64,000 nt of DNA from Phyllobates terribilis (taxonomy: Eukaryota). A program made the position numbers and the translations under genes. This document shows positions 34,101 to 59,005 of this stretch, one piece after another; position 1 is the first letter of the stretch, and each line of letters begins with the position of its first letter. The stretch covers positions 154,814,001 to 154,878,000 of the forward strand of contig NW_027362773.1 in NCBI RefSeq assembly GCF_046119375.1, read 5' to 3'. The notes beneath the pieces were generated by a model, which saw only the letters and a list, made by a program, of their open reading frames with translations, searched no databases and was not told the origin of the DNA.

Positions 34101-37100
34101 ATCACGGCTGTCTATTATAGACTTCTGCCCTCTTAGTTTTACCTATTCCCCCGTTTTCGCTGCCAGGTACGAGCGGGAAAACGACTGCGTGGCCACTACT
34201 GACGACATCACCATATCCGTCTCCACGTCCTTCCTGCCTGAGCTCAGCTCCATCCACCCTCCACACTACTTCTTCACCTACAGAATACGGTGAGTACACA
34301 GAGCCGGTCTGTATATGGATGGTATATAGCCATTTTAACTCCTTAATGACCTATGACTGATAAAGGAGCGCAGTTTGCTCCACACAGGGCAGGTGCTTGC
34401 TGTGCTATACAGCTAGCACCTGCCTCTAACAGCAGCGACCAGAACTAGCTCCAATCGTTGCTATTTCAGTCCTGTCGATCACCTACGGCGGCATTTAAAT
34501 GGTAAGAAAGGACGCAGGCGACCATTCATATTTGCCTGCAATACAAGTTCATTACCATAGCACCCCAGGGACCTGACAAAGGCCCCCCGTCACAGCTATC
34601 TTGGCGCTCGTAAGGTGGGGGTCATGGGAGATGGTTATTTGTACTGAAGAATTGCAGTATAATAGTATGAATGATCGCAGGGTCAAGTCTCCTGACAAGG
34701 ACTAAAAAAAATGTAATTAAAAAATGGCCCAGAGCAAATTAAAAACAAAGTTCAGAATTTTTTTTTTAAAGCAGTAAGATAAAAGGAATCAAACTGTATA
34801 AATGTATTATCTCCGGTTATTGTTACCATGCAATAAACATAAAAATGCAATAACAAAAAAACGTAGTTGCTTGGGTCTTATCTGCACGGTGCAGCAAGAC
34901 GTTTAAAAGGAAGTGATGGCGCATCTCGGGTGACTTTTATCTTTTTCTTTTTGTTGCTCCTTTTATTTCCCAGGATGGAGATGGCCAAGAATGCATTGCC
35001 AGAGAAAGCGTGCCAGCTGGATAGCCGCTACTGGAGAATCACTGATGCCAAAGGGAATGTGGAGGAGGTGCAGGGACCGGGCGTGGTGGGTGAGTGACGG
35101 TCATAGATGGATCCTACAGAGGATGCATCTGTTAGGGGGATGCTGGTCATGGACTCATAGGGGCTGTCCGGGCACAGGTATCATACAGGTGGGAGTCTGG
35201 CACCCCGTCCAGTCTGGAGTTTTCTCTTGCAGCGTAGTTTCTTGTTCTTTTTGAAAAGTGTTCAAGGTGTATAAATCCGGCAGACGCCAGAGTAAACGAC
35301 CAGATCGGAGGGGTAAGACTCCCGCCGCCCCATCAATCTGAACAGGTCATCAATACTTGTGCCAGGACAACCCCTTTTAATCAGATTTTATGTGTATAAC
35401 TTGTCTTAATGCAGAAACTGAGAAGCCATTGGGTTGTTGTATTTTCTAGTATCGTTTTATCTTAATTGACGCAGGTAAGTTGCACCATAATTAGGACCTC
35501 TCTACTGCCCCCCCGCCAATTGCTAAATTTAAAGGGATGCTCCCATCTCGGTAAGTATCGGCTGATTTCTGAGACCCTCTACAATCCCGAGAATGATGAG
35601 GCGGAGACTCTGATAGTTTTGGGGCTTCCAGACACTTGGGAACATACTGGTCTACAGGGAAACCTGAACACAGCACTGCCATATTTCTCAATATTGGAGG
35701 TCGGACCCCCAGCAATCCATAAGTGCACCCACGCTGCTCCGCTGAGAGTTGTGCTCCATCAGCTCACTTTTCTGAGACTTGAGCCTTGATATCAAACTCT
35801 ACATTGACTTCATTGAGCTCTGGTGGAGGAGAAAAATGCAAAGCTCCACCATGACAAGCCTCCAAACTGTCAGATGATATCTGGGACACTACAGCGCTCT
35901 ACACCATGTAGTTGCCGATCTCGGTACTGCTGCTCTAATCTGCAGTACTGAAAACAGCAACTACAGTGTACAAAGCTGTGCTGATCAGGGGGCTCAGACC
36001 CCCAATGACATATTGATGACCTTATCCTAAGGACTTCCTTAGCAAGTCTTCATTTTATTCTTTCAGGTGATTACCCCCAACTGAGGCCGGGGCGCGGATA
36101 CGAGTACACTAGCTGCACGACTTTCTCTACAACCTCAGGGTATATGGAGGGGACGTATACATTTCACCGTATGGACAACAGAGGCGAGGTCTTTAATGTC
36201 ACCATCCCCCGCTTTCACATGAAATGTCCTACATTTCGAGTGTCTACCATTTCTACAGTAAGTAGCAGCGAGACTGCAGATCATGCACCAATAAAGGCAA
36301 ACGCCCCCTACTGTCTGTCTGGAGTTTGTGCCCCGGGAACAGTCTTATGTGGAACAGATGAGGGTCTTCCCCAAACTGTTCCCACAAAGCTGAAGCTACA
36401 ATTGTCCACAATGTTTTGAACTGAAGATTAAGATTTCCCATCACTGGAGCTGAGGGTCCGCGGCCCCCCCCCCCTGATAACAGCCCATAGCGTCATCCTC
36501 CTCCACAATCTGTACAGCGGCACAATGCAGTCAGGGGGTAACATCCTCCTGGAATCACCAAACCCAGACTCCTCCATCAGACGCAGATAGAGAAGTGCGA
36601 TCCATCACTGCACAGAACACGTCTCCTCCAGAGTCCAGTGGTGGCGGCTTTACACCACTCCATCCGACTCTCTGCATTGTGCTTGGTGATATACGGCTGC
36701 AGGCAGCTGCTCGGCCATGAAGCTCCCGGCGGGGGCGCAGTGCTTGTCCTAATATCAGAGGAGAAGTAGAAAATGAGGCCACTGGAAAACTGTCTAAATA
36801 CAATTGTGTATTGGAATCCAGTCTCCAGCATGAAATCCAAAAAGATAATTTGTCAGTTCTTCAGTACAAAAAGTGAAACTCATTATATAGTCATTCCACA
36901 CAGAGAGATCTATTATATAGAGTCATTACACACAGAGGGATCTATTATATAGAGTCATTACACGCAGAGGGATCTATTATATAGAGTCATTACACGCAGA
37001 GGGATCTATTATATAGAGTCATTACACACAGAGGGATCTATTATATAGAGTCATTACAGACAGAGCGATCTATTATATAGAGTCATTACACACAGAGGGA

Positions 37101-39383
37101 TCTATTATATAGAGTCATAACACACAGAGGGATCTATTATATAGAGTCATTACACACAGAGGGGTCTATTTCACATGTTTATTTCTGTTAATGTTGATGA
37201 TTATGGCTTACAGCCAATGAAAACACAAAAGTTATTATCACAGTAAATTAGAATACTTATAAAAACCGCTTGAAAAATTATTTTAAAATCTGAAATGTCT
37301 GTTCAGTAAATGCCTCAATACTTGGTCGGGCTCCTTGTGCATCAATTACTGCATCAATGCAGCAATGTGGCATGGAGGGATCAGCCTGTGGCACTGCTGA
37401 GGTGTTATGGAAGCCCAGGTGGCTTTGATAGCCGCCTTCAGCTCGTCTGCATTGTTGGGTCTGGGGTCTCTCATCTTCCTCTTGACAATACCCCATAGAC
37501 TCTCTATAATAGATCCTCTATGGGGTTAAGGTCAGGCGAGTTTGCTGCCAACCAAGTACAGTGATACTGTTGTGTGTAAACCAGGTATTGGTACTTTTGA
37601 CAGTGTGGACAGGGGCCAAGTCCGGCTGGAGAATGACATTTCCATCTCCATAAAGCTTGTCGACAGAGGGAAGCATGAAGTGCTGTAAAATGTCCTGGTA
37701 GATGGCTGCGCTGACTTTAGTCTTGATAAAACACAGTGGACCTACACCAGCAGATGACATGGCCCCCCAAACCATCACTGATTGTGGAGACTTCACAGTA
37801 GACCTCCAGCAGCTTGGATTGTGGCCTCTCCACTCTTCCTCCAGACTCTGGGATCTTGTGGAGCGTCAATGATTGCCTTCTGGACATCTGTCAAGTCAGC
37901 AGTCTTCCCCATGATTGTGGAGCCTACTGAAACAGACTAAGGGACCTTTTTAAACGCTTAGGAAGCCTTTGCTCGTGTTTTTTGTTAATCTAATTTACTG
38001 AGATAATGACTTTAGTGTTTTCATTGGCTGTAAGCCATAATCAGCATTAACAGAAATAAACACTTGAAATAGATCCCTCTGTGTGTAATGACTCTATATA
38101 ATAGATCCCTCTGTGTGTAATGACTCTATATAATAGATCCCTCTGTGTGTAATGACTCTATATAATAGATCCCTCTGTGTGTAATGACTCTATATAATAG
38201 ATCCCTCTGTGTGTAATGACTCTATATAATAGATCCCTCTGTGTGTAATGACTCTATATAATAGATCCCTCTGTGTGTAATGACTCTATATAATAGATCC
38301 CTCTGTGTGTAATGACTCTATATAATAGATCCCTCTGTGTGTAATGACTCTATATAATAGATCCCTCTGTGTGTAATGACTCTATATAATAGATCCCTCT
38401 GTGTGTAATGACTCTATATAATAGATCCCTCTGTGTGTAATGACTCTATATAATAGATCCCTCTGTGTGTAATGACTCTATATAATAGATCCCTCTGTGT
38501 GTAATGACTCTATATAATAGATCCCTCTGTGTGTAATGGCTCTATATAATAGATCCCTCTGTGTGTAATGACTCTATATAATAGATCCCTCTGTGTGTAA
38601 TGACTCTATATAATAGATCACTCTGTGTGTAATGGCTCTATATAATAGATCCCTCTGTGTGTAATGACTCTATATAATAGATCCCTCTGTGTGTAATAAC
38701 TCTATATAATAGATCGCTCTGTGTGTGATGACTCTATATAATAGATCCCTCTGTGTGTAACGACTCTATATAATAGATCCCTGTGTGTAATGACTCTATA
38801 TAATAGATCCCTGTGTGTAATGACTCTATATAATAGATCCCTCTGTGTGTAATGACTCTATATAATAGATCCCTCTGTGTGTAATGACTCTATAATATAT
38901 ATGTTTCACTTTTTGTATTGAAGAACTGAAATAAATTAGCTTTTTGATGATATTCTAATTTAGCGAGAAGCACCTGTACCTCCGGGATGAGGGGAACCTG
39001 GGGAGGGTGGTGTGACAACAAGGTTGGCTGTTATACGTTGGTGGGGGAAAGAGGGGAATGGGGCCAGACGAGAAACCGGAATTCGATGATTAAAATGAGT
39101 TTCTCAGGAGTTTCCTCACGTTTAGTGTGAACAGACCCCTGAAATTCACTCTCTGCCTCCTTAGTGTTTAACCATTTGTGGTGCACTGTAGATGAGTTTC
39201 TGCTCTTCTCCTGATGGGGGCAGCACCTGACGAGTGTTTTGTGTTTCTCTTGTGCAGGAGGAGAGCTGCAATGATTGTTTTCTACATGACGACGACTCCA
39301 CAGACACAGATGATTACGAGGAGAGAAGGCGAGTACTGAACATGCCCCATCCTCCGGCCCGGTGCACCCGTTACAACACCTGA
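28061..39383 (+). CDS. FBXO3: F-box only protein 3 (F-box, SMI1/KNR4, ApaG domains), 11 exons, 1353 nt, about 450 aa
   Basis: join(28061-28152,30195-30284,31072-31235,31673-31787,31866-32070,32641-32686,33300-33384,34167-34289,34974-35089,36067-36257,39258-39383); all GT-AG with matching phases; motifs LPSDPLLLILSYLD, SNHYRSEDLLDVDTAAGG, HYFFTYRIR, QLDSRYWRIT, EYTSCTTFSTTSGYMEG. Confidence 0.97.
28270..29405. repeat. CpG-rich minisatellite (about 31-37 bp, CTCGTCTGTCCGTCACCGTGTACGC(G)n) in FBXO3 intron 1
   Basis: About 33 units with variable G runs; explains ORFs 27983-29676. Confidence 0.95.
30195..30284 (+). CDS. FBXO3: FBXO3 exon 2
   Basis: SCSLLNRRFNQLCNHDPLWKWPCRRYWLVS; 90 nt; donor GTAAGT. 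Confidence 0.93.
31072..31235 (+). CDS. FBXO3: FBXO3 exon 3
   Basis: EDKKAQKNCSWKATFLEYYNDLGRYMHHYAKLKAAWDTLKAYLGEHCPRMINSLK; 164 nt. Confidence 0.95.
31673..31787 (+). CDS. FBXO3: FBXO3 exon 4
   Basis: DGVQEEDLDTIEERIGSRLPDDYRCSLRIHNGQKLVVP; 115 nt. Confidence 0.96.
31866..32070 (+). CDS. FBXO3: FBXO3 exon 5
   Basis: GLMGSMALSNHYRSEDLLDVDTAAGG...NEIFYQCP; 205 nt, after a 78-nt intron. Confidence 0.96.
32641..32686 (+). CDS. FBXO3: FBXO3 exon 6
   Basis: DQTTHNPAALDMFIT; 46 nt. Confidence 0.92.
33300..33384 (+). CDS. FBXO3: FBXO3 exon 7
   Basis: GTSFTQWFTSYVNHVVSKDYPIIRDQIF; 85 nt. Confidence 0.95.
34167..34289 (+). CDS. FBXO3: FBXO3 exon 8 (ApaG start)
   Basis: RYERENDCVATTDDITISVSTSFLPELSSIHPPHYFFTYRI; 123 nt. 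Confidence 0.96.
34974..35089 (+). CDS. FBXO3: FBXO3 exon 9
   Basis: RMEMAKNALPEKACQLDSRYWRITDAKGNVEEVQGPGVV; 116 nt. Confidence 0.96.
36067..36257 (+). CDS. FBXO3: FBXO3 exon 10
   Basis: GDYPQLRPGRGYEYTSCTTFSTTSGYMEGTYTFH...PRFHMKCPTFRVSTIST; 191 nt; donor GTAAGT. Confidence 0.95.
36884..37170. repeat. 32-bp array in the left Tc1 TIR, about 9 copies
   Basis: TATTATATAGAGTCATTACACACAGAGGGATC. Confidence 0.92.
38068..38900. repeat. 32-bp array in the right Tc1 TIR, about 26 copies, reverse complement of the left array
   Basis: ATAGATCCCTCTGTGTGTAATGACTCTATATA. Confidence 0.95.
39258..39383 (+). CDS. FBXO3: FBXO3 terminal exon 11
   Basis: EESCNDCFLHDDDSTDTDDYEERRRVLNMPHPPARCTRYNT*; acceptor TGTGCAG; resembles the vertebrate acidic / RRRV / C-x-R tail. 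Confidence 0.85.
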   Translation, partial: EESCNDCFLHDDDSTDTDDYEERRRVLNMPHPPARCTRYNT

Positions 39384-47052: not shown

Positions 47053-47128
47053 ATGATTCACCAAACCTTACACCTCTGCCTTCTCATCTCCGTCATCGGA
47101 ATCTCATCTGCTGCAGACCCCATACAAG
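47053..47128 (+). CDS. Link gene exon 1, signal peptide
   Basis: MIHQTLHLCLLISVIGISSAADPIQ; donor G|GTGAGC, phase 1. Confidence 0.75.
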
Positions 47129-50100
47129 GTGAGCCGATTGCCCATGTCTTGTCCGTAGCCCTCTGTCTTGAACATTCCTGCTGTCTTCTACCCTATTTAG
47201 GCAACTGTGTCTGTAACCGAGGGACTATGCTATGTTGGGTGCAGAGGTAACAATCAAGCAAGAGGGGTCCCAAAAGCCCCTCTATTATCTTGGGTGCAGA
47301 GGTAACAATTAAACCAGAGGGGACCCAAAAGCCCTTCTATTATCTTGGGTGCAGAGGTAACAAACCAGAGGGGACCCAAAAGCCCTTCTACTAGCTTGGG
47401 TGCAGAGATAACAATTAAAGCAGAGGGGACCCAAAAGCTCCTCTACTAGCTTGGGTGCAGAGATAACAAACCAGAGGGACCCAAAAGTCCCTCTACTAGC
47501 TTGGGTGCAGAGGTAACAATTAAACCAGAGATGACCCAAAAGTCCCTCTACTAGCTTGGGTGCAGAGGTAACAATTAAACCAGAGGGGACCCAAAAGTCC
47601 TTCTACTAGCTTGGTTGCAGAGGTAACAATTAAACCAGAGGGAACCCAAAAGTCCCTCTACCAGCTTGGGTGCAGAGGTAACAAACCAGAGGAGACCCAA
47701 AAGTCCCTCTACTAGCTTGGGTGCAGAGGTAACAATTAAACCAGAGGGGACCCAAAAGCCCCTCTATTAGCTTGGGTGCAGAGGCAACAATTAAACCAGA
47801 GAGGACCCAAAAGTCCCTCTACTAGCTTGGGTGCAGAGGTAACAATTAAACCAGAGGGGACCCAAAAGTCCTTCTACTAGCTTGGGTGCAGAGGTAACAA
47901 TTAAACCAGAGGGAACCCAAAAGTCCCTCTACCAGCTTGGGTGCAGAGGTAACAAACCAGAGGGGACCCAAAAGTCCCTCTACTAGCTTGGGTGCAGAGG
48001 TAACAATTAAACCAGAGGGGACCCAAAAGCCCCTCTATTAGCTTGGGTGCAGAGGTAACAATTAAACCAGAGGAGACCCAAATGTCCCTCTACTAGCTTG
48101 GGTGCAGAGCACTGGTGGACACAGTCAGGAGAGGGCCCCTGGGCACGAACAGAATATGGGCCCTTTGCAGCCTAATAGCCCATCATAATGCACAATTTGA
48201 ACTGCTTTGGAGATGGGAATGGGTCCCCTTACCTTTTGGGCCCCTGTGCGACCACACAGGTTGCACTAATGATATGTCCGCCCCTGGTGCAGAGGTAACA
48301 ATTAAACCAGAGGGGACTCAAAAGCCCCTCTACTAGCACTTAAAAAAAATACAGTGTTGTAAGGCACATGGCGGGTGCGGCCCCTGTTATAAATTTTCCA
48401 TTAGAGCCCAAGGGCATTTGCTTATATTTTTGCAATTTACAAAAACCCTGCCTTCTCTGCCCCACTAATAATACTGCAACCCCACTCAGGATCAGCAAGC
48501 TACAAGCCCTTAAAGGGTAACTTTGTAAAGGCGTGCTCCTGTGTTTTATACACTTATTACCTCCTGTCTCGGTCTATCCTATCTATTATATGCCTGTCTA
48601 ATAACCTTGCATTATATACTTGTGCCTAAAGCAATGGAGACTTTCTAGAAAACGCCAAAATTGGTCATCACAGACCTCCGTCCTGGGACAAAAAGGCCCC
48701 AAACTACTAAGCAGTCAGGATCAAAGACTCACTGGTGTCTTAAACCAGCCAAACATGTATGGGAGGGGTGTCTTAAGTTTTTTTGCCCCAGATGGCAGAT
48801 GATCAGGCTGCTGGATTTTAACATGCCCAATCCTTTCGTGTTCAGAGAAAATAAGCTGCTGCCGGAGGAGACTGTGAGCAGAAAACTTCTGACTTCCCAT
48901 AGAGAATACATGTATGCTGAGCCAAACCGAGCGTAACAAATGATGGAAATTTGTCAATTTTTCTATGTCTTTTGTTCTCTTTATAGCATTTACCATTCAG
49001 CTTAGTTAATTGTATGTTTTTTTAGACCAGACTTTTACGGACGCGGTGATATCAAATAGCTTTAATTTTGAACTGGGAAAAGGGAAGTGATTTACGTTTG
49101 TTTATATATTTTAAATACATTTTTACACATTTATACATTTTTTACTTTATTTTTAAATTCCCTGTAGATCAGTTCAGTTCAAGTGACTGCAATACCAAAC
49201 ACAGCCAAGTGTGGCGCTACGCTAACATATGCATTTAAGCATCTCTCCATCAATGTAATAAATCTTACAAGTGCTCATGAACCTTCCTTTCTGTTTCGTC
49301 CATGTATTGCACAGGGAGTCCATTGATTTCAATGGGGACTTGTAATGCTTTGTTTCTCCTGTAGGGGCACTGCAGGAAAATTGAACACAATTAACATCTA
49401 TTAATGAACCAACTATGGAAATCATTTTTTTTCTTCCTACCAGTAATTTCTGGAGTGTTCATGCCAAACAATATCTCAGTAAATTACGATGGAGCCAAAG
49501 TGGCCTGTGCCGCGCACTACAGCAGACTGGCGACCCTGCAAGATATCACTGTTGCGTTTGCAAAGGGCTATGAGTTCTGCACGTAAGTATGGCCGACAAT
49601 ATGGGGTACCCCATAATATGTTTATAACCATGGCTGTGTGTCGGATTTGTGCCGCCCCATACACCACTGGTATCTAGAAATGTCAGCAGTGAACTTACCA
49701 CTTTTCCTGAGATATCTGTATTAGTAAATACTTGTTTATTCCATAAAAAATAATTCTGGGGAATTTTATCGGACCTCCATAAATTATGTGTCACGGGTGT
49801 GTCAGAGGTGACAGACAGTCGCCCTGCAGTTGGTTGCAGGAGATCTCTACATATGGCATTACAGACACCTTCTTAGATCTGTCTCACTCTAGGACCCAGT
49901 GGCTACCTCCCTGTTGCTGATTGACAGCCTGGCCTGGGTGCTTAAATACTTTGTCTGCAATAGGGAGGTGCCGGTGATATTCACATGTTTCCTTGTGAAA
50001 GCTTGGAGCAAGTGCAGTCTGCTTACTTCCTCTCTGGAACAAAGAGGACGTGTGTGTTATCTCTCTGAAGTCGATTCAAGCTAAGCTATTTTCCCCCTTG

Positions 50101-53100
50101 TTTGTCTACCTTGCTGTCTTTAGTGTTTAGTGGGGACTGACTAGTGCTCATCCCCCCCTTCCCTAGCCAGGGCCAAGCGCTAGGGAAATACAGGGGTAGG
50201 TTCCTGTGCGACGATTTGTGGAGAACGAATATATGGACGTTAGTGGAGACAGGGTGTGGGAGCCAAAACCAACGCCTATTTTTCTCAGGTGTGGGAGCCA
50301 AAACCAAGTGAGGAACAATCAGGGAAAATGTATAATAGAAACAAGTCACCAATTCTGCATTTATCACCAACTCCTGAGAAAAAAATACGGATAGTGAGGC
50401 CGTAACCTATCAGATGATCATCATCAGACTACATAAAGTTAGTTTGTAGTCTGTTACCAAGGAGATGGGAGCTGAATACACAAAATCTTTTTTTCTTTTT
50501 TAAATTTTATATATAGATTTTTAGGGGACTTTTTGCATTAAAGAGTAAGTCTATTATTAGGGATGGAAGATCACTAAGTCCCTATCGTTTGCAACAATGA
50601 GAGGTGGGAGGTTTTGTGTTTTTTTTGGGGGGGGGATATATAGTAAAACAGATATTTAACTATTTTTTTTTAACCAGATGGGGCTGGATAGAGGAGAAGA
50701 GGGTTGCCATGCTCCGTCTGACGCCATTTCAAGCGTGTGCCGATTATAATGTTGGTATTTTGATCAGAGACTGTCCGAACGTTAGGTCCACATTCTGTGT
50801 CAATAGCATCTCAGGTGAGTCCGTCCACGGAGAAATCTGAAAAACTATTATCTTCTCACCCGTCAGCTTTCTGGGCATGTCAGGTAGAAAAAAAAAAGTT
50901 CCTCTATTGTTCCTTTTGGAAAAGTATGACTAGTTGGGTTGTAACACTCCTGTTATTTCTCAATATATCGCCGGACACTGCCCAATCAATGCTGACAGTA
51001 TCAAAGAGTGCAGGGACACGCCCTATTGTCAATTTACTCATGCATTTCCAGGAGGAATAACAGAGGGACACATTATTTCATGATAAAAACAAGGCATGTC
51101 AGGAGAGCGAACAGGTCCAAATACACCATGGATGAAGTAGTGAATTTTGTGGAGACGCAGCGTTTGACGTCTAACCGCTGAACTTTGCTGCGCCGTATTA
51201 CTGATTCGGGGATAGAATTTTAAGTGACCGGTAGAGAAGAGCGAAATGCAATTTTTTTTGATTTGCACAAATCTAGAAAAATGGCAGCCAGCTGGAAGAA
51301 AAGCCCCCAAAAAGAATTATACTCACCTGTCCCAGGTCCGCTCCTCACCTGTCCTGCTGCTGCGTAGATCCACTCCCCGGTCCTCTGACCTTTACTTTGG
51401 ATTTTCCAGTCTCATAATTTATCCCCATCCCTGGCTTTATTATGTTATGGGGTCCGGAGAGATGTCCTATATGGGCACTTTCTGCAAAAAAATAAAAATA
51501 AAAATGGATCACAAATCAAATCAGAACCACATTTTTAAAGATTTGTTCAACCCTAGTGACAGGTGTCAGGGCACAGGGGGTATTAAATTCTTTAGCTTGG
51601 TCACTTTCTAGTGATGCCCCTGGATTGGGTGGGATCCATAGTGGAGCCCATATAGTAGACAACACTTTACACCTATGTATCAGGACCCGTAGGACGCAGA
51701 CCAGTTCACCAGTTTGAGCGCAGCCGGCCAGTTTGAGCGCAGCCGACCAGTTTGCAGACAGCAGGCCAGTTTGACCTCAGCCCACAAGTTTGAGGACAGC
51801 CGGCCAGTTTGAGGACAGCCGGCCAGTTTGAGGACAGAAGGCCAGTTTGAGGACAGCAGGCCAGTTTGAGCGCAGCCGGCCAGTTTGAGCTCAGCAGATC
51901 AGTTTGACTACAGCAGGCCAGTTTGAGCTCAGCAGGCCAGTTTGAGCTCAGCCGACCAGTTTGAGGACAACAGGCCAGTTTGAACTCAGCCCACCAGTTT
52001 GAGCTCAGCAGGCCAATTTGAGCTCAGCAGGCCAGTTTGAGCTCTGGAGGCCAGTTTGAGCTCAGCAGACCAGTTTGAGCACAGCAGGCCAGTTTGAGCA
52101 CAGCGGGCCAGTTTGAGCACAGTGAGCCAGTTTGAGCTCAGTGGGCCAGTTTGAGCTCAGCCGGCCAGTTTGAGCGCAGCCGGCCAGTTTGAGCTCAGCG
52201 GGCCAGTTTGAGCGCAGCCGACCAGTTTGCAGACAGCAGGCCAGTTTGCAGACAGCAGGCCAGTTTGAACTCAGCCCACCAGTTTGAGGACAGCCGGCCA
52301 GTTTGAGGACAGCCGGCCAGTTTGAGGACAGAAGGCCAGTTTGAGGACAGAAGGCCAGTTTGAGGACAGTCGGCCAGTTTGAGGACAGCAGGCCAGTTTG
52401 AGCGCAGCCGGCCAGTTTGAGCTCAACAGATCAGTTTGAGCTCAGCAGGCCAGTTTGAGCGCAGCCGACCAGTTTGCAGACAGCAGGCCAGTTTGAACTC
52501 AGCCCACCAGTTTGAGGACAGCCGGCCAGTTTGAGGACAGAAGGCCAGTTTGAGGACAGCAGGCCAGTCTGAGCGCAGTCGGCCAGTTTGAGCTCAACAG
52601 ATCAGTTTGACGACAGCAGGCCAGTTTGAACTCAGCAGGCCAGTTTGAACTCAGCAGGCCAGTTTGAGCTCAGCAGACCAGTTTGAGCACAGCGGGCCAG
52701 TTTGAGCACAGCGGGCCAGTTTGAGCACAGTGAGCCAGTTTGAGCTCAGTGGGCCAGTTTGAGCTCAGCCGGCCAGTTTGAGCGCAGCCGGCCAGTTTGA
52801 GCGCAGCCGGCCAGTTTGAGCTCAGCGGTCCAGTTTGAGCGCAGCCGACCAGTTTGCAGACAGCAGGCCAGTTTGCAGACAGCAGGCCAGTTTGAACTCA
52901 GCCCACCAGTTTGAGGACAGCCGGCCAGTTTGAGGACAGCTGGCCAGTTTGAGGACAGAAGGCCAGTTTGAGGACAGAAGGCCAGTTTGAGGACAGTCGG
53001 CCAGTTTGAGGACAGCAGGCCAGTTTGACCGCAGCCGGCCAGTTTGAGCTCAACAGATCAGTTTGAGCTCAGCAGGCCAGTTTGAGCTCAGCAGGCCAGT

Positions 53101-56100
53101 TTGAGCTCAGCCCACCAGTTTGAGCTCAGCAGGCCAGTTTGAGCTCAGCCCACCAGTTTGAGCTCAGCAGGCCAATTTGAGCTCAGCAGGCCAGTTTGAG
53201 CTCAGCAGGCCAATTTGAGCGCAGCGGACCAGTTTGAGCACAGCGGGCCAGTTTGAGCACAGCGGGCCAGTTTGAGCACAGCAAGCCAGTTTGAGCTCAG
53301 CCGGGCAGTTTGAGCACAGCCGGGCAGTTTGAGCGCAGCCGGCCAGTTTGAGCTCAGCCGGGCAGTTTGAGCACAGCCGGGCAGTTTGAGCGCAGCCGGC
53401 CAGTTTGAGCTCAGCCGGCCAGTTTGAGCTCAGCGGGCCAGTTTGAGCACAGCGGGCCAGTTTGAGCTCAGCCGGTCAGTTTGAGCGCAGCCGGCCAGTT
53501 TGAGCTCAGCCCGCCAGTTTGAGCTCAGCTGGCCAGTTTGAGCGCAGCGGGCCAGTTTGAGCACAGCGGGCCAGTTTGAGCTCAGCCGGTCAGTTTGAGC
53601 TCAGCGGGCCAGTTTGAGCTCAGCGGGCCAGTTTGAGCGCAGCCGGCCAGTTTGAGCGCAGCCGGCCAGTTTGAGCTCAGTGGGCCAGTTTGAGCGCAGC
53701 CGGTCAGTTTGAGCTCAGCGGGCCAGTTTGAGCGCAGCCGGCCAGTTTGAGCTCAGCGGGCCAGTTTGAGCTCAGCAGGCCAGTTTGTGCTCAGCGGGTC
53801 AGTTTGAGCGCAGCAGATTAATTTGAGTACAGCAGACCAGTTTGAGCGCAGCGGACCAGTTTGAGCGCAGCGGACCAGTTAGTGCTCAGCGGGTCAGTTT
53901 CAGCGCAGCAGATTAATTTGAGTACAGTAGACCAGTTTGAGGGCAGTGGATCAGTTTGAGCACAGCAGACCAGTTCATGTATGACTTAATGATGAAATGT
54001 GGTCTTTCCATACATTCAGGGACGATTCAGATACTTCCTATACCTACCAGTCTTGTCCCGTCCTATGAAAACGCCAGCAAGACCTGCACAGGCAGCGGAC
54101 TCGCCATAGCCACCAAGGAGGAGATAGAGCAGAAAAAAAGCCTCATAACAGACAGTCGGTAAGATGTGATCCATTGTGTGCGAATGGGAGGTATTCTGTG
54201 CTGTTCATCCTGATCCTCCTGGTTCACGACTGCCAGTACTACCGAGACCCTCAGCATATATCTCAGATAGATGTATAGTAAGAAGTCACAGCCGTGAACC
54301 TGACAATCGGTATGGCCGGACTTCTTGTTTTCAACAAACTGTCGTATCTTGTCTCCAAGTGTCTGAATAAAACATTGATTTATCCTAAAAATGCAATAAA
54401 CTTTTGCTCCTGTCCAAACTTTTCAATTATTCTTTTCAAAAGTAACATTAGCAAAAAACATGGCTGCTCTCGTCCAGAAATAGCACCACCTCTGTCCACA
54501 GGTTGTATCCGGTATTGCAGGCTGTCTCTATTGTAGTGAATGCTGCACACAACCTGTGGACGGCTGTAGCACTGTGGGTTTTTTTTTTTAGAAAGCTGCC
54601 ATGTTTCTCTACCCCTGCACAATGTTATATGTGTTATATAGTAACACTGTGCGATATACGATGTGTGACCGTGTCGGTGCTTTTGCTTCCATTAGTCTTG
54701 CCTGGTATAACTGGGGAGTGGGGAAGGTGAGCGGCGGGAGTTTTGAACAGAATTCCTGTGATGAGACGTTAAATTACGCTTCAGCCTTCTGCTATAATCC
54801 GGCCTGTAAGTATTCACCAATCAATGTACTATAAGTACAAGAATAAAAGTATGTATCATCAGGAAATGACCTGATAATACCTATAGTATATATAGATAAC
54901 ACAGGATCCACCAGTCACAATAGGTGATGTCACAGCTCACCTCCTACTCCTCCTGTACAATGCCTGATAACACCTCCTATCTACAGTAGATATCACAGGA
55001 TCCACCATTCACAATAGGTGATGTCACAGCTCACCTCCTCCTCCTGTACAATGACTGATAACACCTCTATATACAGTAGATAACACAGGATCCACCATTC
55101 ACAATAGATGATGTCACAGCTCACCTCCTCCTCCTCCTGTACAATGCCTGATAACACCTCCTATCTACAGTAGATATCACAGGATCCACCATTCGCAATA
55201 GGTGATCTCACAGCTCACCTCCTCCTCCTGTACAATGACTGATAACACCTCTATATACAGTAGATAACACAGGATCCACCATTCAAAATAGATGATGTCA
55301 CAGCTCACCTCCTCCTCCTGCACAATGACTGATAACACCTCTATATACAGTAGATATCACAGGATCCACCATTCACAATAGGTGATGTCACAGCTCACCT
55401 CCTCCTCCTGTACAATGACTGATAACACCTTTATATACAGTAGATAACACAGGATCCACCATTCACAATAGGTGATGTCACAGCTCACCTCCTCCTTCTC
55501 CTGTACAGTGACTGATAACACCTCTATATACAGTAGATAACACAGGATTCAACATTCACAATAGGTGATGTCACAGCTCACTTCCTCCCCCTCCTGTACA
55601 ATGACTGATAACACCTCTATATACAGTAGATAACACAGGATCCACCGTTCACAATAGGTGATGTCACAGCTCACCTCCTCCTTCTCCTGTACAGTGACTG
55701 ATAACACCTCTATATACAGTAGATAACACAGGATCCACCATTCACAGTAGGTGATGTCACAGCTCACCTCCTCCTGTACAATGACTGATAACACCTCTAT
55801 ATACAGTAGTTAACACAGGATCCACCATTCACAATAGGTGATGTCACAGCTCACCCCCTCCTCCTGTACAATGACTGATAACACCTCTATATACAGTAGA
55901 TAGCACAGGATCCACCATTCACAATAGGTGAGGTCACAGCTCACCTCCTCCTTCTGTACAATGACTGATAACACCTCTATATACAGTAGATAACACAGGA
56001 TCCACCATTCACAATAGGTGATGTCACAGCTCACCTCCTCCTCCTGTACAATGACTGATAACACCTCTATATACAGTAGATAGCACAGGATCCACCATTC

Positions 56101-57321
56101 ACAATAGGTGAGGTCACAGCTCACCACCTCCTCCTGTACAATGACTGATAACACCTCTATATACAGTAGATAACACAGGATCCACCATTCACAATAGGTG
56201 ATATCACAGCTCACCTCCACCTGTACAATGACTGATAACACCTCTATATACAGTAGATAACACAGGATTCACCATTCACAATAGGAGATATCACAGCTCA
56301 CCTCCTCCTTCTGTACAATGACTGATAACACCTCTATATACAGTAGATAACACGGGATTCACATTCACAATAGGTGATGTTACAGCTCACCTCCTCCTCC
56401 TGTGCAATGACTGATAACACCTCTATATACAGTAGATAACTCAGGATTCACCATTCACAATAGGAGATATCACAGCTCACCTCCTCCTTCTGTACAATGA
56501 ATGATAACACCTCTATATACAGTAGATAACACAGGGTCCACCATTCACAATATATGAAAATAGATTTTCTAAACTCTTTTGGACCCTCCCCAAAAATGAT
56601 GTATGTGTATTTAGCCCCTGACCTCATGCTTAGGCAATGGTATGGGTCTGTAATACTGATCCCTCAATCTAGGGCTAATTTATACCCTTTAGGTGTATGT
56701 TCACATGATGCATTTTTTTTTTGGTTCACTATTTTTATCTCAAATTTTGGAAAAAAAAAAAAATGGATTGTTTTTGCCCTGTTCACACATAGGATATTTA
56801 TTTTTTGCATGTGGCAAGAAAACCGCAGATGCATTTTGATCCATTTTTTTTTTTTTGCACTATCCCACTTTGATCTCAATGGAGAAAAACTTTAGTAAAA
56901 ATGATGAAAGAATTGATAAACTGCAGATTTGTAAAAGCAGAAAATGCACCAAAGGTAAAAAAAAAAACAACAAAAAAAAAACAGCAGCAAGGGAAAAAAA
57001 ATGAAATGTGTGAATGAGATTTTAGATCACAACGTGTGAATGCAGTCAAAGAAATCTTATAAAAAAAAAAAAAAAATCATGTGAATAAGACTTTTTTATG
57101 CAATTTTGCAAAATCGTGATAAAAATTCATAGTTTTTGCATCAATTTCAGAAAATTATGGTAAAACCGTGAACGCATCATGTGAACATGGCCTTAGTATG
57201 TTTGTGCTGCTTATGAGGAAACCGTATTGTAAAGATGTCATGTGCTCTATGCAAGGAACGACATGTAATGTATTTTGTTCTCTTACAGTATCTGATGTCC
57301 TCATAACAAAAGATAATCGAA
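47053..57321 (+). CDS. Unnamed secreted or cell-surface protein with two tandem Link (Xlink) modules; 3' end outside the window
   Basis: join(47053-47128,49444-49582,50678-50814,54020-54158,54696-54805,57289-57321,...); phases 1,2,1,2,1,1 all compatible; all GT-AG with pyrimidine tracts; signal peptide; Link motifs C...LAT...GYEFC-x-WGWI...C...FC-x-N and AFCYNP. Confidence 0.85.
47237..48337. repeat. 55-bp minisatellite (50-bp variant lacks ATTAA), about 17 copies, Link-gene intron 1
   Basis: GGGTGCAGAGGTAACAATTAAACCAGAGGGGACCCAAAAGTCCCTCTACTAGCTT at 47719, 47774 onward; last unit split by a MITE. Confidence 0.93.
48110..48286. mobile_element. 177-bp hAT-type MITE
   Basis: 8-bp TSD GTGCAGAG at 48102-48109 and 48287-48294; ends CACTGGTGGACA / TGTCCGCCCCTG. 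Confidence 0.85.
49444..49582 (+). CDS. Link gene exon 2, Link-1 N-half
   Basis: VISGVFMPNNISVNYDGAKVACAAHYSRLATLQDITVAFAKGYEFC; 139 nt; donor GTAAGT. Confidence 0.92.
50678..50814 (+). CDS. Link gene exon 3, Link-1 C-half
   Basis: TWGWIEEKRVAMLRLTPFQACADYNVGILIRDCPNVRSTFCVNSIS; 137 nt; donor GTGAGT. Confidence 0.92.
51701..53960. repeat. 19-bp minisatellite, about 119 copies, near-invariant core CAGTTTG, Link-gene intron 3
   Basis: Unit CAGCAGGCCAGTTTGAGCT; period 19 measured at 51918/51937. Confidence 0.96.
54020..54158 (+). CDS. Link gene exon 4, Link-2 N-half
   Basis: GTIQILPIPTSLVPSYENASKTCTGSGLAIATKEEIEQKKSLITDS; 139 nt; donor GTAAGA. Confidence 0.85.
54696..54805 (+). CDS. Link gene exon 5, Link-2 C-half
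   Basis: RLAWYNWGVGKVSGGSFEQNSCDETLNYASAFCYNPA; 110 nt; donor GTAAGT. Confidence 0.85.
54888..56552 (-). repeat. Second array of the 90-bp satellite, about 18 copies, opposite orientation, Link-gene intron 5
   Basis: Reverse complement of the 21417 unit (ACAGGATCCACCATTCACAATAGGTGATGTCACAGCTCACCTCCTCC). Confidence 0.96.
57289..57321 (+). CDS. Link gene candidate exon 6, 33-nt microexon
   Basis: TTTTGTTCTCTTACAG|...|GTAAGT; LSDVLITKDNR; phase 1-1. Confidence 0.6.
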
Positions 57322-57354: not shown

Positions 57355-59005
57355 GACTGCCCAAAAAAATACAGGGAGCACTCAGATAACACATCCTAGA
57401 TCTGAATGAATGAAATATTCTCATTGAATACTTTGCTCTGTACAAAGCTGAATGTGCTGACAACAAAATCACATAAAAATCATCAATGGAAATCACATTT
57501 ATTAACCAATGGAGGCCTGGATTTGGAGTCACCCCCAAAATTAAAGTGGAAAAACACACTACAGGCTGATCCAACTTTGATGTAATGTCCTTAAAACAAG
57601 TCAAAATGAGGCTGAGTATTGTGTGTGGCCTCCACGTGCCTGTATGACCTCCCTACAACGCCTGGGCATGCTCCTGATGAGGCTGAGTATTGTGTGTGGC
57701 CTCCACGTGCCTGTATGACCTCCCTACAACGCCTTGGCATGCTCCTGATGAGGCTGAGTATTGTGTGTGGCCTACACGTGCCTGTATGACCTCCCTACAA
57801 CGCCTGGGCATGCTCCTGATGAGGCTGAGTATTGTGTGTGGCCTCCACGTGCCTGTATGACCTCCCTACAACGCCTGGGCATGCTCCTGATGAGGCTGAG
57901 TATTGTGTGTGGCCTACACGTGCCTGTATGACCTCCCTACAACGCCTGGGCATGCTCCTGATGAGGCTGAGTATTGTGTGTGGCCTCCACGTGCCTGTAT
58001 GACCTCTCTACAACGCCTGGGCATGCTCCTGATGAGGCTGAGTATTGTGTGTGGCCTCCACGTGCCTGTATGACCTCCCTACAACGCCTGGGCATGCTCC
58101 TGATGAGGCTGAGTATTGTGTGTGGCCTCCACGTGCCTGTATGACCTCTCTACAACGCCTGGGCATGCTCCTGATGAGGCTGAGTATTGTGTGTGGCCTC
58201 CACGTGCCTGTATGACCTCCCTACAACGCCTGGGCATGCTCCTGATGAGGCTGAGTATTGTGTGTGGCCTCCACGTGCCTGTATGACCTCCCTACAACGC
58301 CTGGGCATGCTCCTGATGAGGCTGAGTATTGTGTGTGGCCTCCACGTGCCTGTATGACCTCCCTACAACGCCTGGGCATGCTCCTGATGAGGTTGCGGAT
58401 GGTCCCCTGTGGGATCTCCTCCCAGACCTGGACTAAAGCATCCGCCAACTCCTGGACAGTCTGTGGTGCAATGTGACGTTGGTGGATGGAGCGAGACATG
58501 ATGTCCCAGATGTGCTCAATGGGATTCAGGTCTGGGGAAAGGGCGGGCCAGTCCATAGCTTCAATGCCTTCATCTTGCAGGAACTGCTGACACACTCCAG
58601 CCACATGAGGTCTGGCATTGTCCTGCATTAGGAGGAGCCCAGGGCCAACCGCACCAGCATGTGGTCTCACAAGGGGTCTGAGGATCTCATCTCGGTACCT
58701 AATGGCAGTCAGGCTACCTCTGGCGAGCACATGAAGGGCTGTGCGGCCCCCCAAAGAAATGCCACCCCACACCATTACTGACCCACTGCCAAACCGGTCA
58801 TGCTGAAGGATGTTGCAGGCAGCAGATCGCTCTCCACGGCGTCTCCAGACTCTGTCACGTCTGTCACATGTGCTCAGTGTGAACCTGCTTTCATCTGTGA
58901 AGAGCACAGGGCGCCAGTGGCGGCTTTGCCAATCCTGGTGTTCTGTGGCATTTCTTTGGAGGACCGCACAGCCCTCCATGTGCTCGCCAGAGGTAGTCTT
59001 GCTGC
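57355..59005 (-). mobile_element. 5'-truncated Tc1 (DD34E) element with transposase C-terminal half
   Basis: VLFTDESRF...VMVWGGI...MQDNARPH...SPDLNPIEH (34 residues between D and E)...ARGGHTQY; TIR-like TA|GACTGCCCAAAAAAAT at 57355. Confidence 0.93.
57607..58387. repeat. 71-bp tandem array x11 formed from the last codons of the Tc1 transposase
   Basis: Units start 57607, 57678 ... 58317; unique sequence resumes at 58388. Confidence 0.96.

What the first reader, a model, noticed from the sequence alone, without database searches (positions are those of the whole stretch)
49444..54805. The two Link modules arose by duplication of a two-exon cassette with the CD44/TSG-6 intron position
Seen: exons 2 and 4 are both 139 nt, phase 1-2; exons 3 and 5 are phase 2-1. 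The internal intron falls right after GYEFC-T in Link-1 and at the equivalent TDS-R in Link-2. Established: CD44, LYVE1 and TSG-6 split the Link at this point (CD44 GFETC-R), whereas HAPLN/lectican Links are single exons. Inference: tandem Links evolved here independently of lecticans, by internal duplication in a CD44/LYVE1-like ancestor (RVAMLRLTPFQACADYNVGILI resembles CD44 [22 protein letters not shown]).
Basis: partly seen in the sequence, partly recalled or inferred. Interest (0 to 1): 0.7.

Follow-up and report, generated by a model that had tools for sequence, protein, structure and literature searches.

The report
Frog membrane receptor with tandem Link modules
A poison-frog gene for a cell-surface protein carries two hyaluronan-receptor-type "Link" modules, each built from the same two-exon unit; the repeat is real and came from duplicating that unit, but the shared intron is as old as the chordates, so it does not by itself point to a CD44-like parent.

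Summary
Observation confirmed. Exons 49444-49582 (139 nt, phase 1-2), 50678-50814 (137 nt, 2-1), 54020-54158 (139 nt, 1-2) and 54696-54805 (110 nt, 2-1) match the NCBI model XP_073515650.1 ('uncharacterized protein', Phyllobates terribilis, 316 aa). Both internal introns split the codon just after the second-cysteine position.

Module 2 gives no Pfam hit by itself. A profile of its orthologues hits only Link structures (aggrecan G1, LYVE-1, TSG-6; E about 5e-6). Its AlphaFold model (pLDDT 86.5) superposes on the TSG-6 Link module (TM 0.71).

- The same phase-2 intron occurs in 7 of 8 Link modules of an amphioxus gene, so it is ancestral to chordates.
- The gene is not frog-specific. About 17 frog species have it, and bichir, sturgeon and paddlefish carry a three-cassette version, so the repeats predate the split of ray-finned fishes and tetrapods.
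- A CD44/LYVE1 affinity is favoured by profile scores for module 1, cysteine spacing, and the gene's position between FBXO3 and CD59, near CD44 on the human map.

I could not run the decisive phylogeny, because no CD44, LYVE1 or HAPLN sequences could be retrieved.

The parts
47053..47128 (+). Exon 1: start codon and signal peptide; ends in phase 1
   Evidence: Read directly; identical to residues 1-25 of P0014; exon map on L005
49444..49582 (+). Exon 2: first half of Link module 1 (139 nt, phase 1->2); ends two bases into the codon after Cys71 (C2)
   Evidence: Pfam Xlink E 6.5e-5, profile positions 10-46; best PDB hit CD44; exon map
50678..50814 (+). Exon 3: second half of Link module 1 (137 nt, phase 2->1); holds C3, an extra Cys104 and C4
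   Evidence: Pfam Xlink profile positions 49-78; best PDB hit LYVE-1; exon map
54020..54158 (+). Exon 4: first half of the divergent Link module 2 (139 nt, phase 1->2); holds C1 (Cys140); the C2 position is Ser163
   Evidence: family profile A2 hits aggrecan G1, LYVE-1 and TSG-6; helices H17-26 and H34-43 in the model
54696..54805 (+). Exon 5: second half of Link module 2 (110 nt, phase 2->1); about 10-17 residues shorter than a canonical Link; lacks C3; holds extra Cys185 and C4
   Evidence: hhalign A2 vs A3 93%; Foldseek top hit TSG-6 Link, TM 0.71
57289..57321 (+). Exon 6: 33-nt stalk mini-exon (phase 1->1). Exons 7 (transmembrane) and 8 (cytoplasmic tail) lie about 5.6 kb beyond the window end.
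   Evidence: exon map on L005, where exons 7-8 sit at 32521-33119, i.e. window-equivalent 69573-70171
51709..53975 (.). 19-bp x 119 minisatellite that fills most of intron 3, between the two cassettes
   Evidence: Tandem Repeats Finder

Best explanation
The stretch is the 5' two-thirds of an intact, conserved gene for a type I membrane protein. The protein has a signal peptide, Link module 1, a degenerate Link module 2, a short stalk, a transmembrane helix and a conserved 80-residue cytoplasmic tail. Each Link module is encoded by a two-exon cassette (phase 1-2, then 2-1). The cassette as a whole is phase 1-1, so it can be duplicated or deleted in frame. The modules most likely arose by tandem duplication of this cassette inside one gene. 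This happened before ray-finned fishes and tetrapods diverged, not in frogs: bichir and sturgeon orthologues carry three cassettes, and frog modules 1 and 2 correspond to fish modules 1 and 3. The intron inside the Link module is inherited from the ancestral chordate Link module. It therefore fits a CD44/LYVE1-like parent but is not diagnostic of one. Other evidence favours a parent on the CD44/LYVE1 side of the superfamily: profile similarity of module 1, cysteine spacing, and a location between FBXO3 and CD59 in the CD44 neighbourhood. By inference the protein is a cell-surface glycosaminoglycan (probably hyaluronan) receptor. In this reading module 1 is the likely sugar-binding unit. Module 2 has lost the C2-C3 disulfide and a beta-hairpin, and probably buttresses module 1 through an inter-module disulfide (Cys104-Cys185).
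For: Gene model and exon phases. Orthologues occur in about 17 anurans and in bichir, sturgeon and paddlefish. Three cassettes of 139+140, 151+137 and 136+116 nt, all phase 1-2/2-1, are present in bichir, with the same pattern in sturgeon. All 17 mapped introns fall in one alignment column. Module 2 is a Link: Pfam Xlink is sub-threshold in 8 of 10 orthologues; the profile against the PDB gives aggrecan G1 4e-6, LYVE-1 5e-6 and TSG-6 1e-5, with only Link entries at the top; hhalign against module 1 gives 93%, E 3e-7; the AF2 model has pLDDT 86.5 and its Foldseek top hits are TSG-6, aggrecan G1 and LYVE-1 at TM 0.68-0.76. Tree: the family's modules form one clade against amphioxus and mussel (96/94*), frog L1 groups with fish M1 (94/64), and frog L2 groups with fish M3 (100/100*). 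CD44/LYVE1 side: the module 1 profile scores LYVE-1 66 and 57 bits, CD44 55, TSG-6 39, aggrecan 34 and 24. Spacing is C1-X23-C2-X20-C3-X19-C4, against X23-X20-X20 reported for LYVE-1 and CD44 (PMC2132933). FBXO3 lies upstream in frog and bichir and CD59 downstream in sturgeon. The human order is CD59, FBXO3 ... CD44 (PMC9408430). Disulfide idea: 16 of 17 frogs have both extra cysteines, and Spea has lost both.
Against: No tree including CD44, LYVE1, TSG-6, stabilin or HAPLN/lectican modules could be made, so 'each other's closest relatives' is not shown. By same-profile bit scores the family's own modules are no closer to each other than to CD44 or LYVE-1 (M1 profile: M2 57-71 against LYVE-1 66; M2 profile: M1 47-75 against CD44 69, TSG-6 65). 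The order of the duplications, and whether frogs lost or fishes gained the middle module, is unresolved (AU p 0.18-0.34). The flanking cysteine pair that marks the extended CD44/LYVE-1 Link is absent. Ligand, expression and the disulfide are all inferred. P. terribilis has Thr where most orthologues have Lys or Arg after C2.
Confidence: 0.65

Rival explanations
1. The tandem Links are homologous to the tandem Link pair of HAPLN and lecticans. In this reading one ancient tandem pair lost its Ig domain and gained a membrane anchor here, and the second lectican Link lost its intron later.
For: NCBI names the fish orthologues 'aggrecan core protein-like'. The fish middle-module profile gives its highest whole-chain score to aggrecan G1 (101 bits). 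Aggrecan's first Link is also a two-exon module (PMC4648834).
Against: The 101 bits are the sum of two domains (55.7 + 43.3). Per domain, CD44 (69), TSG-6 (65) and LYVE-1 (62) score higher. The module 1 profile scores aggrecan Links lowest (34 and 24 bits). There is no Ig exon: the signal-peptide exon joins directly to Link 1. C3-C4 spacing is 19-21 residues here against 26 in aggrecan. All modules here are split, whereas aggrecan B' is a single exon. The predicted two-module arrangement does not superpose on aggrecan G1 (rmsd 18 A, TMq 0.38), although that model's inter-domain confidence is modest (pTM 0.59).
Confidence: 0.1
2. The modules were assembled by exon shuffling from two or three different Link genes, not by duplication within one gene. 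The shared exon structure would then simply reflect the ancestral structure of all chordate Link modules.
For: The cassette is phase 1-1 and ancestral (amphioxus), so any Link gene could have donated it. Modules within the family are no more similar to each other than to CD44 or LYVE-1 by profile score. Module 1 leans towards LYVE-1, while the fish middle module is equidistant from CD44, TSG-6 and LYVE-1.
Against: Adjacent repeats in one gene are most simply explained by tandem duplication, and the same process clearly occurred independently in amphioxus (8 modules) and mussel (4 modules). The family's modules form one clade against the invertebrate modules (96/94*), though that test lacks vertebrate outgroups. 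hhalign between modules 1 and 2 of the fish gives 99.6%.
Confidence: 0.2
3. Exons 4-5 do not encode a Link module at all, and the matching exon size and phases are coincidence.
For: There is no Pfam or PDB hit for either exon of the window, or for P0014 residues 117-202. There is no BLASTP similarity to module 1. Two of the four canonical cysteines are missing.
Against: The orthologue profile hits only Link structures, at E about 5e-6. Pfam Xlink aligns in register in 8 of 10 orthologues. hhalign to module 1 gives 93%. A confident AF2 model has a Link fold. The fish module 3 keeps the PGW motif at the intron.
Confidence: 0.03

Closest known systems
LYVE-1 and CD44 (single extended Link, type I membrane hyaluronan receptors)
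   Same: Both are type I membrane proteins with the Link module directly after the signal-peptide exon. The Link is encoded by two exons, as in CD44 exons 2+3 (PMC4689260). The profile scores for module 1 are highest against these two (LYVE-1 66 bits, CD44 55). Identity in structural alignment is 28-33%. Cysteine spacing is nearly identical. The gene lies in the CD44 chromosomal neighbourhood.
   Different: This family has two or three Link modules instead of one. It lacks the flanking cysteine pair of the extended CD44/LYVE-1 domain. The transmembrane and tail regions are unrelated. It has extra cysteines that suggest an inter-module bridge, and its terminal module is degenerate.
HAPLN1-4 and lectican G1/G2 (Ig + tandem Link pair)
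   Same: Link modules are in tandem. The first aggrecan Link is also encoded by two exons (PMC4648834).
   Different: There is no Ig domain, and the protein is membrane-anchored rather than secreted. All modules are split, whereas aggrecan B' is a single exon. The C3-C4 loop is shorter. Aggrecan gives the lowest profile scores for module 1.
TSG-6 (single minimal Link + CUB)
   Same: The Link is minimal, without flanking extensions. TSG-6 is the best structural match for module 2 (TM 0.71).
   Different: There is no CUB domain, the protein is membrane-anchored, and the modules are in tandem.
Amphioxus LDLa/Link/laminin-G protein (XP_078609040.1, P0007)
   Same: It has repeated two-exon Link cassettes with the identical phase-2 intron after C2.
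   Different: It is an unrelated large secreted architecture, with Link modules alternating with LDL-receptor class A exons. Its modules form a separate clade (99/92*), so its repeats arose independently.

Membership tests
Link module superfamily (Pfam PF00193 Xlink): module 1 | Significant match to the Xlink profile over the whole module | tested here: met
   The two window exons match profile positions 10-46 and 49-78. Whole orthologues score 58.7-76.4 bits against a cut-off of 27. PF00193 is precomputed for P0014. The module 1 profile hits LYVE-1 at 1e-17.
Link module superfamily: module 1 | Four conserved cysteines (C1-C4, C2-C3) | tested here: met
   Cys47, 71, 92 and 112 are invariant in the family; a fifth, Cys104, is extra.
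Link module superfamily: module 2 | Match to the Xlink profile above the curated cut-off | tested here: not met
   P0014:117-202 gives no hit. Orthologues give 13.8-24.2 bits, below the cut-off of 27, and only over profile positions of about 2-57.
Link module superfamily: module 2 | Homology to solved Link modules, and a Link fold | tested here: met
   The profile against the PDB gives aggrecan 4e-6, LYVE-1 5e-6 and TSG-6 1e-5. The AF2 model has pLDDT 86.5. Foldseek probability is 1.00 with TM 0.68-0.76 to TSG-6, aggrecan and LYVE-1.
Link module superfamily: module 2 | Four conserved cysteines | tested here: not met
   Only C1 (Cys140) and C4 (Cys196) remain. The C2 position is Ser163. C3 is missing, along with a deletion of about 10-17 residues. 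Cys185 aligns with the extra Cys104 of module 1.
CD44/LYVE-1 subgroup (extended Link) | Cysteine spacing C1-X23-C2-X20-C3-X20-C4 | tested here: met
   Module 1 has X23, X20, X19 (P0014 Cys47/71/92/112), compared with PMC2132933.
CD44/LYVE-1 subgroup (extended Link) | An additional cysteine pair flanking the Link module | tested here: not met
   There is no cysteine between the signal peptide and C1, and none between C4 of module 1 and C1 of module 2. The feature is as described in PMC2132933.
CD44/LYVE-1 subgroup (extended Link) | Link split by a phase-2 intron right after C2 | tested here: inconclusive
   The intron is present here. For CD44 the literature confirms only that exons 2+3 encode the Link, and the exact junction was not checked. 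The character is ancestral (amphioxus), so it does not define the subgroup.
HAPLN/lectican class | Ig-like domain preceding the tandem Link pair | tested here: not met
   Pfam finds only Xlink in the family. Exon 1 (signal peptide) is spliced directly to Link 1.
HAPLN/lectican class | Second Link encoded by a single exon (aggrecan exons 6 and 10) | tested here: not met
   All modules here are two-exon cassettes, compared with PMC4648834.
TSG-6 | CUB domain after the Link module | tested here: not met
   No CUB hit in Pfam. A transmembrane segment and a cytoplasmic tail follow instead.

The most novel reading that the evidence does not exclude
This may be an undescribed, ancient fourth architecture of the Link superfamily. 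It would be a membrane receptor with two or three tandem Link modules locked together by an inter-module disulfide, encoded in the FBXO3-CD59 interval as an old neighbour and paralogue of CD44. It would be retained in frogs and early-branching ray-finned fishes and lost in mammals. Tandem Link arrays would then have evolved at least twice in vertebrates from the same ancestral two-exon cassette: once here and once in HAPLN/lecticans.
Probability: 0.45. Interest if true: 0.55.

Novelty: new variant of a known kind. Interest (0 to 1): 0.42.

Why it matters
Link-module proteins are the main hyaluronan receptors and matrix organisers of vertebrates. Textbook classifications recognise single-Link receptors (CD44, LYVE-1, TSG-6, stabilins) and Ig + double-Link matrix proteins (HAPLN, lecticans). 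A conserved membrane protein with tandem Links next to FBXO3 and CD59 would add a lineage that mammals appear to lack. It would give a natural experiment in how tandem Link units are built, by in-frame duplication or deletion of a phase 1-1 cassette and degeneration of the last copy. It also shows that the intra-Link intron is a chordate-wide ancestral character, which bears on how intron positions are used to group Link genes. The practical impact is modest: the gene is already annotated, though unnamed, and its function is untested.

Tried and rejected
1. Exon-by-exon searches of module 2 found nothing: Pfam, PDB, and BLASTP against module 1. Only family profiles revealed the homology.

2. 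The three word-index protein searches were meant to bring in CD44, LYVE1, TSG-6 and HAPLN sequences for a module phylogeny and for intron mapping in non-human genomes. The queries were P0001, P0002, and P0033 restricted to its first two Link modules. They returned only members of this family.

3. ESM Atlas look-alikes gave only generic Xlink clusters at scores below 0.9.

4. Valhmu et al. 1995 (PMC1135764), which should give the exact aggrecan junctions, is not held. Literature searches for Link intron phases, or for a description of this family, found nothing.

5. AU tests could not order the duplications. They also could not decide between loss of the middle module in frogs and its gain in fishes.

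6. The two-module AF2 model has uncertain inter-domain geometry (pTM 0.59) and no coordinates are returned, so the Cys104-Cys185 bridge could not be checked structurally.

Exons were searched one by one by reference, and from then on the database protein P0014 was used by its id. In one search the four exons were concatenated in a local script only to check the reading frame.

8. No human DNA was fetched or compared. No fetched locus is human.


Full report
**What is there**

The window is from a frog genome. The spliced product of the exons in the finding is identical to NCBI protein XP_073515650.1, 'uncharacterized protein [Phyllobates terribilis]' (P0014, 316 aa).

I first read the splice sites directly:

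| Exon | Window coordinates | Length | Phase | Content |
|---|---|---|---|---|
| 1 | 47053-47128 | 76 nt | ends in phase 1 | ATG, signal peptide |
| 2 | 49444-49582 | 139 nt | 1->2 | first half of Link 1 |
| 3 | 50678-50814 | 137 nt | 2->1 | second half of Link 1 |
| 4 | 54020-54158 | 139 nt | 1->2 | first half of Link 2 |
| 5 | 54696-54805 | 110 nt | 2->1 | second half of Link 2 |
| 6 | 57289-57321 | 33 nt | 1->1 | stalk |

An exact protein-to-genome map on the locus fetched for P0014 (L005) confirms these six exons. It places the transmembrane exon (79 nt) and the tail exon (235 nt) about 5.6 kb beyond the window end. Bufo bufo has the same eight exon lengths.

**Is module 2 a Link module?**

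Searched exon by exon and by reference, module 1 is recognisable:
- Pfam Xlink matches exon 2 at 6.5e-5 and exon 3 at 0.12, in consecutive profile positions.
- The best PDB hits are CD44 for exon 2 and LYVE-1 for exon 3.

The two exons of module 2 hit nothing and show no BLASTP similarity to module 1.

The exhaustive search with exon 2 led to orthologues, which I then collected in about 17 anuran species. With these, module 2 resolves as a Link:
- Pfam Xlink aligns in register, though below the cut-off, in 8 of 10 orthologues.
- A profile of 20 module-2 sequences (A2) hits only Link structures at the top of the PDB: aggrecan G1 4e-6, LYVE-1 5e-6 over the full length, TSG-6 1e-5.
- hhalign against the module-1 profile gives 93% probability, E 3e-7.
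- An AlphaFold2 model has mean pLDDT 86.5 and the alpha/beta order of a Link.
- Its best Foldseek matches are the TSG-6 Link module, aggrecan G1 and LYVE-1, at TM 0.68-0.76 and probability 1.00.

Module 2 is a degenerate Link. It keeps C1 and C4. It has Ser at the C2 position, lacks C3, and is about 10-17 residues shorter.

**Intron position**

I aligned 44 modules and marked every intron for which I had an exact exon map. All 17 phase-2 introns fall in the same column: the codon immediately after the C2 position, three residues before the invariant Trp. The 17 are:
- frog modules 1 and 2 in two species;
- fish modules 1-3 in two species;
- amphioxus modules 1-7.

The 'equivalent position' claim for GYEFC|T and TDS|R therefore holds.

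The exon-2 search also hit 'aggrecan core protein-like' proteins of bichir. The word-index searches added the reedfish/bichir, sturgeon and paddlefish members. These share the transmembrane segment, the juxtamembrane Cys cluster and the tail motifs with the frog protein, but they have three Link modules.

Exon maps show three cassettes of the same kind. In bichir they are 139+140, 151+137 and 136+116 nt. In sturgeon they are 139+143, 151+137 and 151+116 nt. Every cassette is phase 1-2 then 2-1.

The module tree shows:
- frog module 1 groups with fish module 1 (94/64);
- frog module 2 groups with fish module 3 (100/100*);
- all family modules form one clade against the amphioxus and mussel modules (96/94*).

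The two frog modules were therefore already distinct before ray-finned fishes and tetrapods separated.

The best tree joins the fish middle module to the last module (86/82). That would imply three ancestral cassettes and loss of the middle one in frogs. AU tests do not reject the alternatives, including a fish-specific duplication of module 1 (p 0.18-0.34).

**The intron is not a CD44/TSG-6 signature**

An amphioxus protein with eight Link modules (P0007) has the same phase-2 intron in seven of them. The eighth has slid by one codon to phase 0. A mussel protein has unsplit 261-nt, phase 1-1 Link exons. The two-exon cassette is therefore the ancestral chordate state.

A review citing Valhmu et al. 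1995 describes aggrecan as follows (PMC4648834):
- the B domain (first Link) of G1 is encoded by exons 4 and 5, and that of G2 by exons 8 and 9;
- each B' domain (second Link) is a single exon, exons 6 and 10.

I could not verify the exact aggrecan junction, because the primary paper is not held.

For CD44, reviews confirm that exon 1 encodes the signal peptide and exons 2+3 the Link module (PMC4689260, PMC4422082). I did not consult human DNA.

**Which known Links are closest?**

I could not obtain CD44, LYVE1, TSG-6 or HAPLN sequences as usable records, so the proposed phylogeny was not possible. As a substitute, I compared per-domain bit scores from the same HMMs against PDB chains and against the family's own modules.

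| Profile | Own family modules | LYVE-1 | CD44 | TSG-6 | Aggrecan L1 / L2 |
|---|---|---|---|---|---|
| Module 1 | fish middle module 57-71 | 66 / 57 | 55 | 39 | 34 / 24 |
| Fish middle module | module 1: 47-75 | 62 / 57 | 69 | 65 | 56 / 43 |
| Last module | middle 16-24; first 6-23 | 26 | no hit | 19 | 16 / 11 |

The family's modules are also no closer to each other than to CD44 or LYVE-1. Similarity alone therefore cannot prove internal duplication.

Characters that favour the CD44/LYVE-1 side:
- Cysteine spacing is X23-X20-X19, against X23-X20-X20 reported for LYVE-1 and CD44 (PMC2132933). Aggrecan has 26 residues between C3 and C4.
- Identity to CD44 and LYVE-1 in structural alignment is 28-33%.

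One character goes against membership of that subgroup: the flanking cysteine pair of the extended CD44/LYVE-1 domain is absent.

**Genomic context**

In the frog and in bichir, the gene lies 7-10 kb downstream of an FBXO3-like gene on the same strand. That neighbour carries F-box, SMI1_KNR4 and ApaG/DUF525 domains. Its exons are in the window at about 31879-39383. In sturgeon, a CD59-like gene follows 3.4 kb downstream.

Published human deletion maps list '... [quoted passage not shown] The family therefore occupies the FBXO3-CD59 interval, which is empty in that human gene list and ten genes from CD44. This fits an old local paralogue of CD44 that mammals have lost. The loss is an inference from a gene list, not a test.

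**How it probably works (inferred)**

The protein is a type I membrane protein whose module 1 retains the canonical Link core. Most orthologues have Lys or Arg followed by an aromatic residue right after C2. From memory, these are the positions of the hyaluronan-contacting Arg78/Tyr79 of CD44. P. terribilis has Thr there.

Modules 1 and 2 each carry one extra cysteine about 8-10 residues before C4, and the ectodomain has 8 cysteines in total. In 16 of 17 frogs both extra cysteines are present. In Spea both are absent. This co-loss supports an inter-module disulfide, the idea of the sibling note s1-224987. Fish proteins have 5+4+3 cysteines.

The two-module model does not superpose on the aggrecan tandem pair, but its inter-domain confidence is modest (pTM 0.59).

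**Verdict**

The cassette-duplication reading is the best explanation, but four changes are needed:
- It is an old event, not a frog event.
- The frog pair corresponds to modules 1 and 3 of a three-module relative.
- The intron is a shared ancestral character and does not mark CD44 ancestry.
- One stated premise about lecticans is wrong.

The CD44/LYVE1 affinity is plausible on independent grounds but unproven. The gene is annotated yet uncharacterised, and I found no paper describing the family. Its architecture, a membrane-anchored tandem Link array without an Ig domain, is a new variant within a well-known superfamily.

**Procedural notes**
Exons were searched singly by reference, and the database protein P0014 was used by id afterwards.
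- In one search the four exons were concatenated in a local script only to check the reading frame.
- No N stretch was filled.
- No human contig was fetched.

Noticed in passing
window 31879-39383 (+): The upstream neighbour on the same strand is an FBXO3-like gene with F-box, SMI1_KNR4 and ApaG/DUF525 domains. Its last exons match the sturgeon protein at 53-83% identity. FBXO3 followed by the Link gene is conserved between frog and bichir, and CD59 follows the Link gene in sturgeon.
   Followed up: partly
P0014 Cys104 (window exon 3, about 50775) and Cys185 (window exon 5, about 54756): One extra cysteine in each Link module is present together in 16 of 17 frog orthologues, and both are lost in Spea bombifrons. 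This covariation suggests an inter-module disulfide. The fish three-module proteins have 5+4+3 cysteines.
   Followed up: partly
window 51709-53975; also 47235-48109, 54865-56552, 57606-58392: Every long intron of the gene holds a large minisatellite: 19 bp x 119, 55 bp x 16, 90 bp x 19 and 71 bp x 11. They account for much of the intron length and for local GC and skew anomalies.
   Followed up: no
L004 (amphioxus, P0007): This 2386-aa amphioxus protein alternates eight two-exon Link cassettes with single-exon, phase 1-1 LDL-receptor class A modules, then has a coiled-coil region and three laminin-G domains. It is a clean example of independent cassette amplification.
   Followed up: partly
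P0038 (metaclust record, 314 aa, source organism not given): This is a fourth three-module family member, 52% identical to sturgeon, with a different C-terminus and no transmembrane segment. It could be a partial model, a secreted isoform, or a member from another fish lineage.
   Followed up: no
P0035 (Acipenser sinensis) and P0018 (Dendrobates tinctorius isoform X2): Some database gene models fuse the Link gene to upstream sequence. P0035 joins the FBXO3 C-terminus to the Link gene, and P0018 carries a 67-residue N-terminal extension read from the 5' leader. These are probably annotation artefacts.
   Followed up: no
window 7110-7512 and 7524-7861: Two runs of N (assembly gap or masked stretch).
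   Followed up: no
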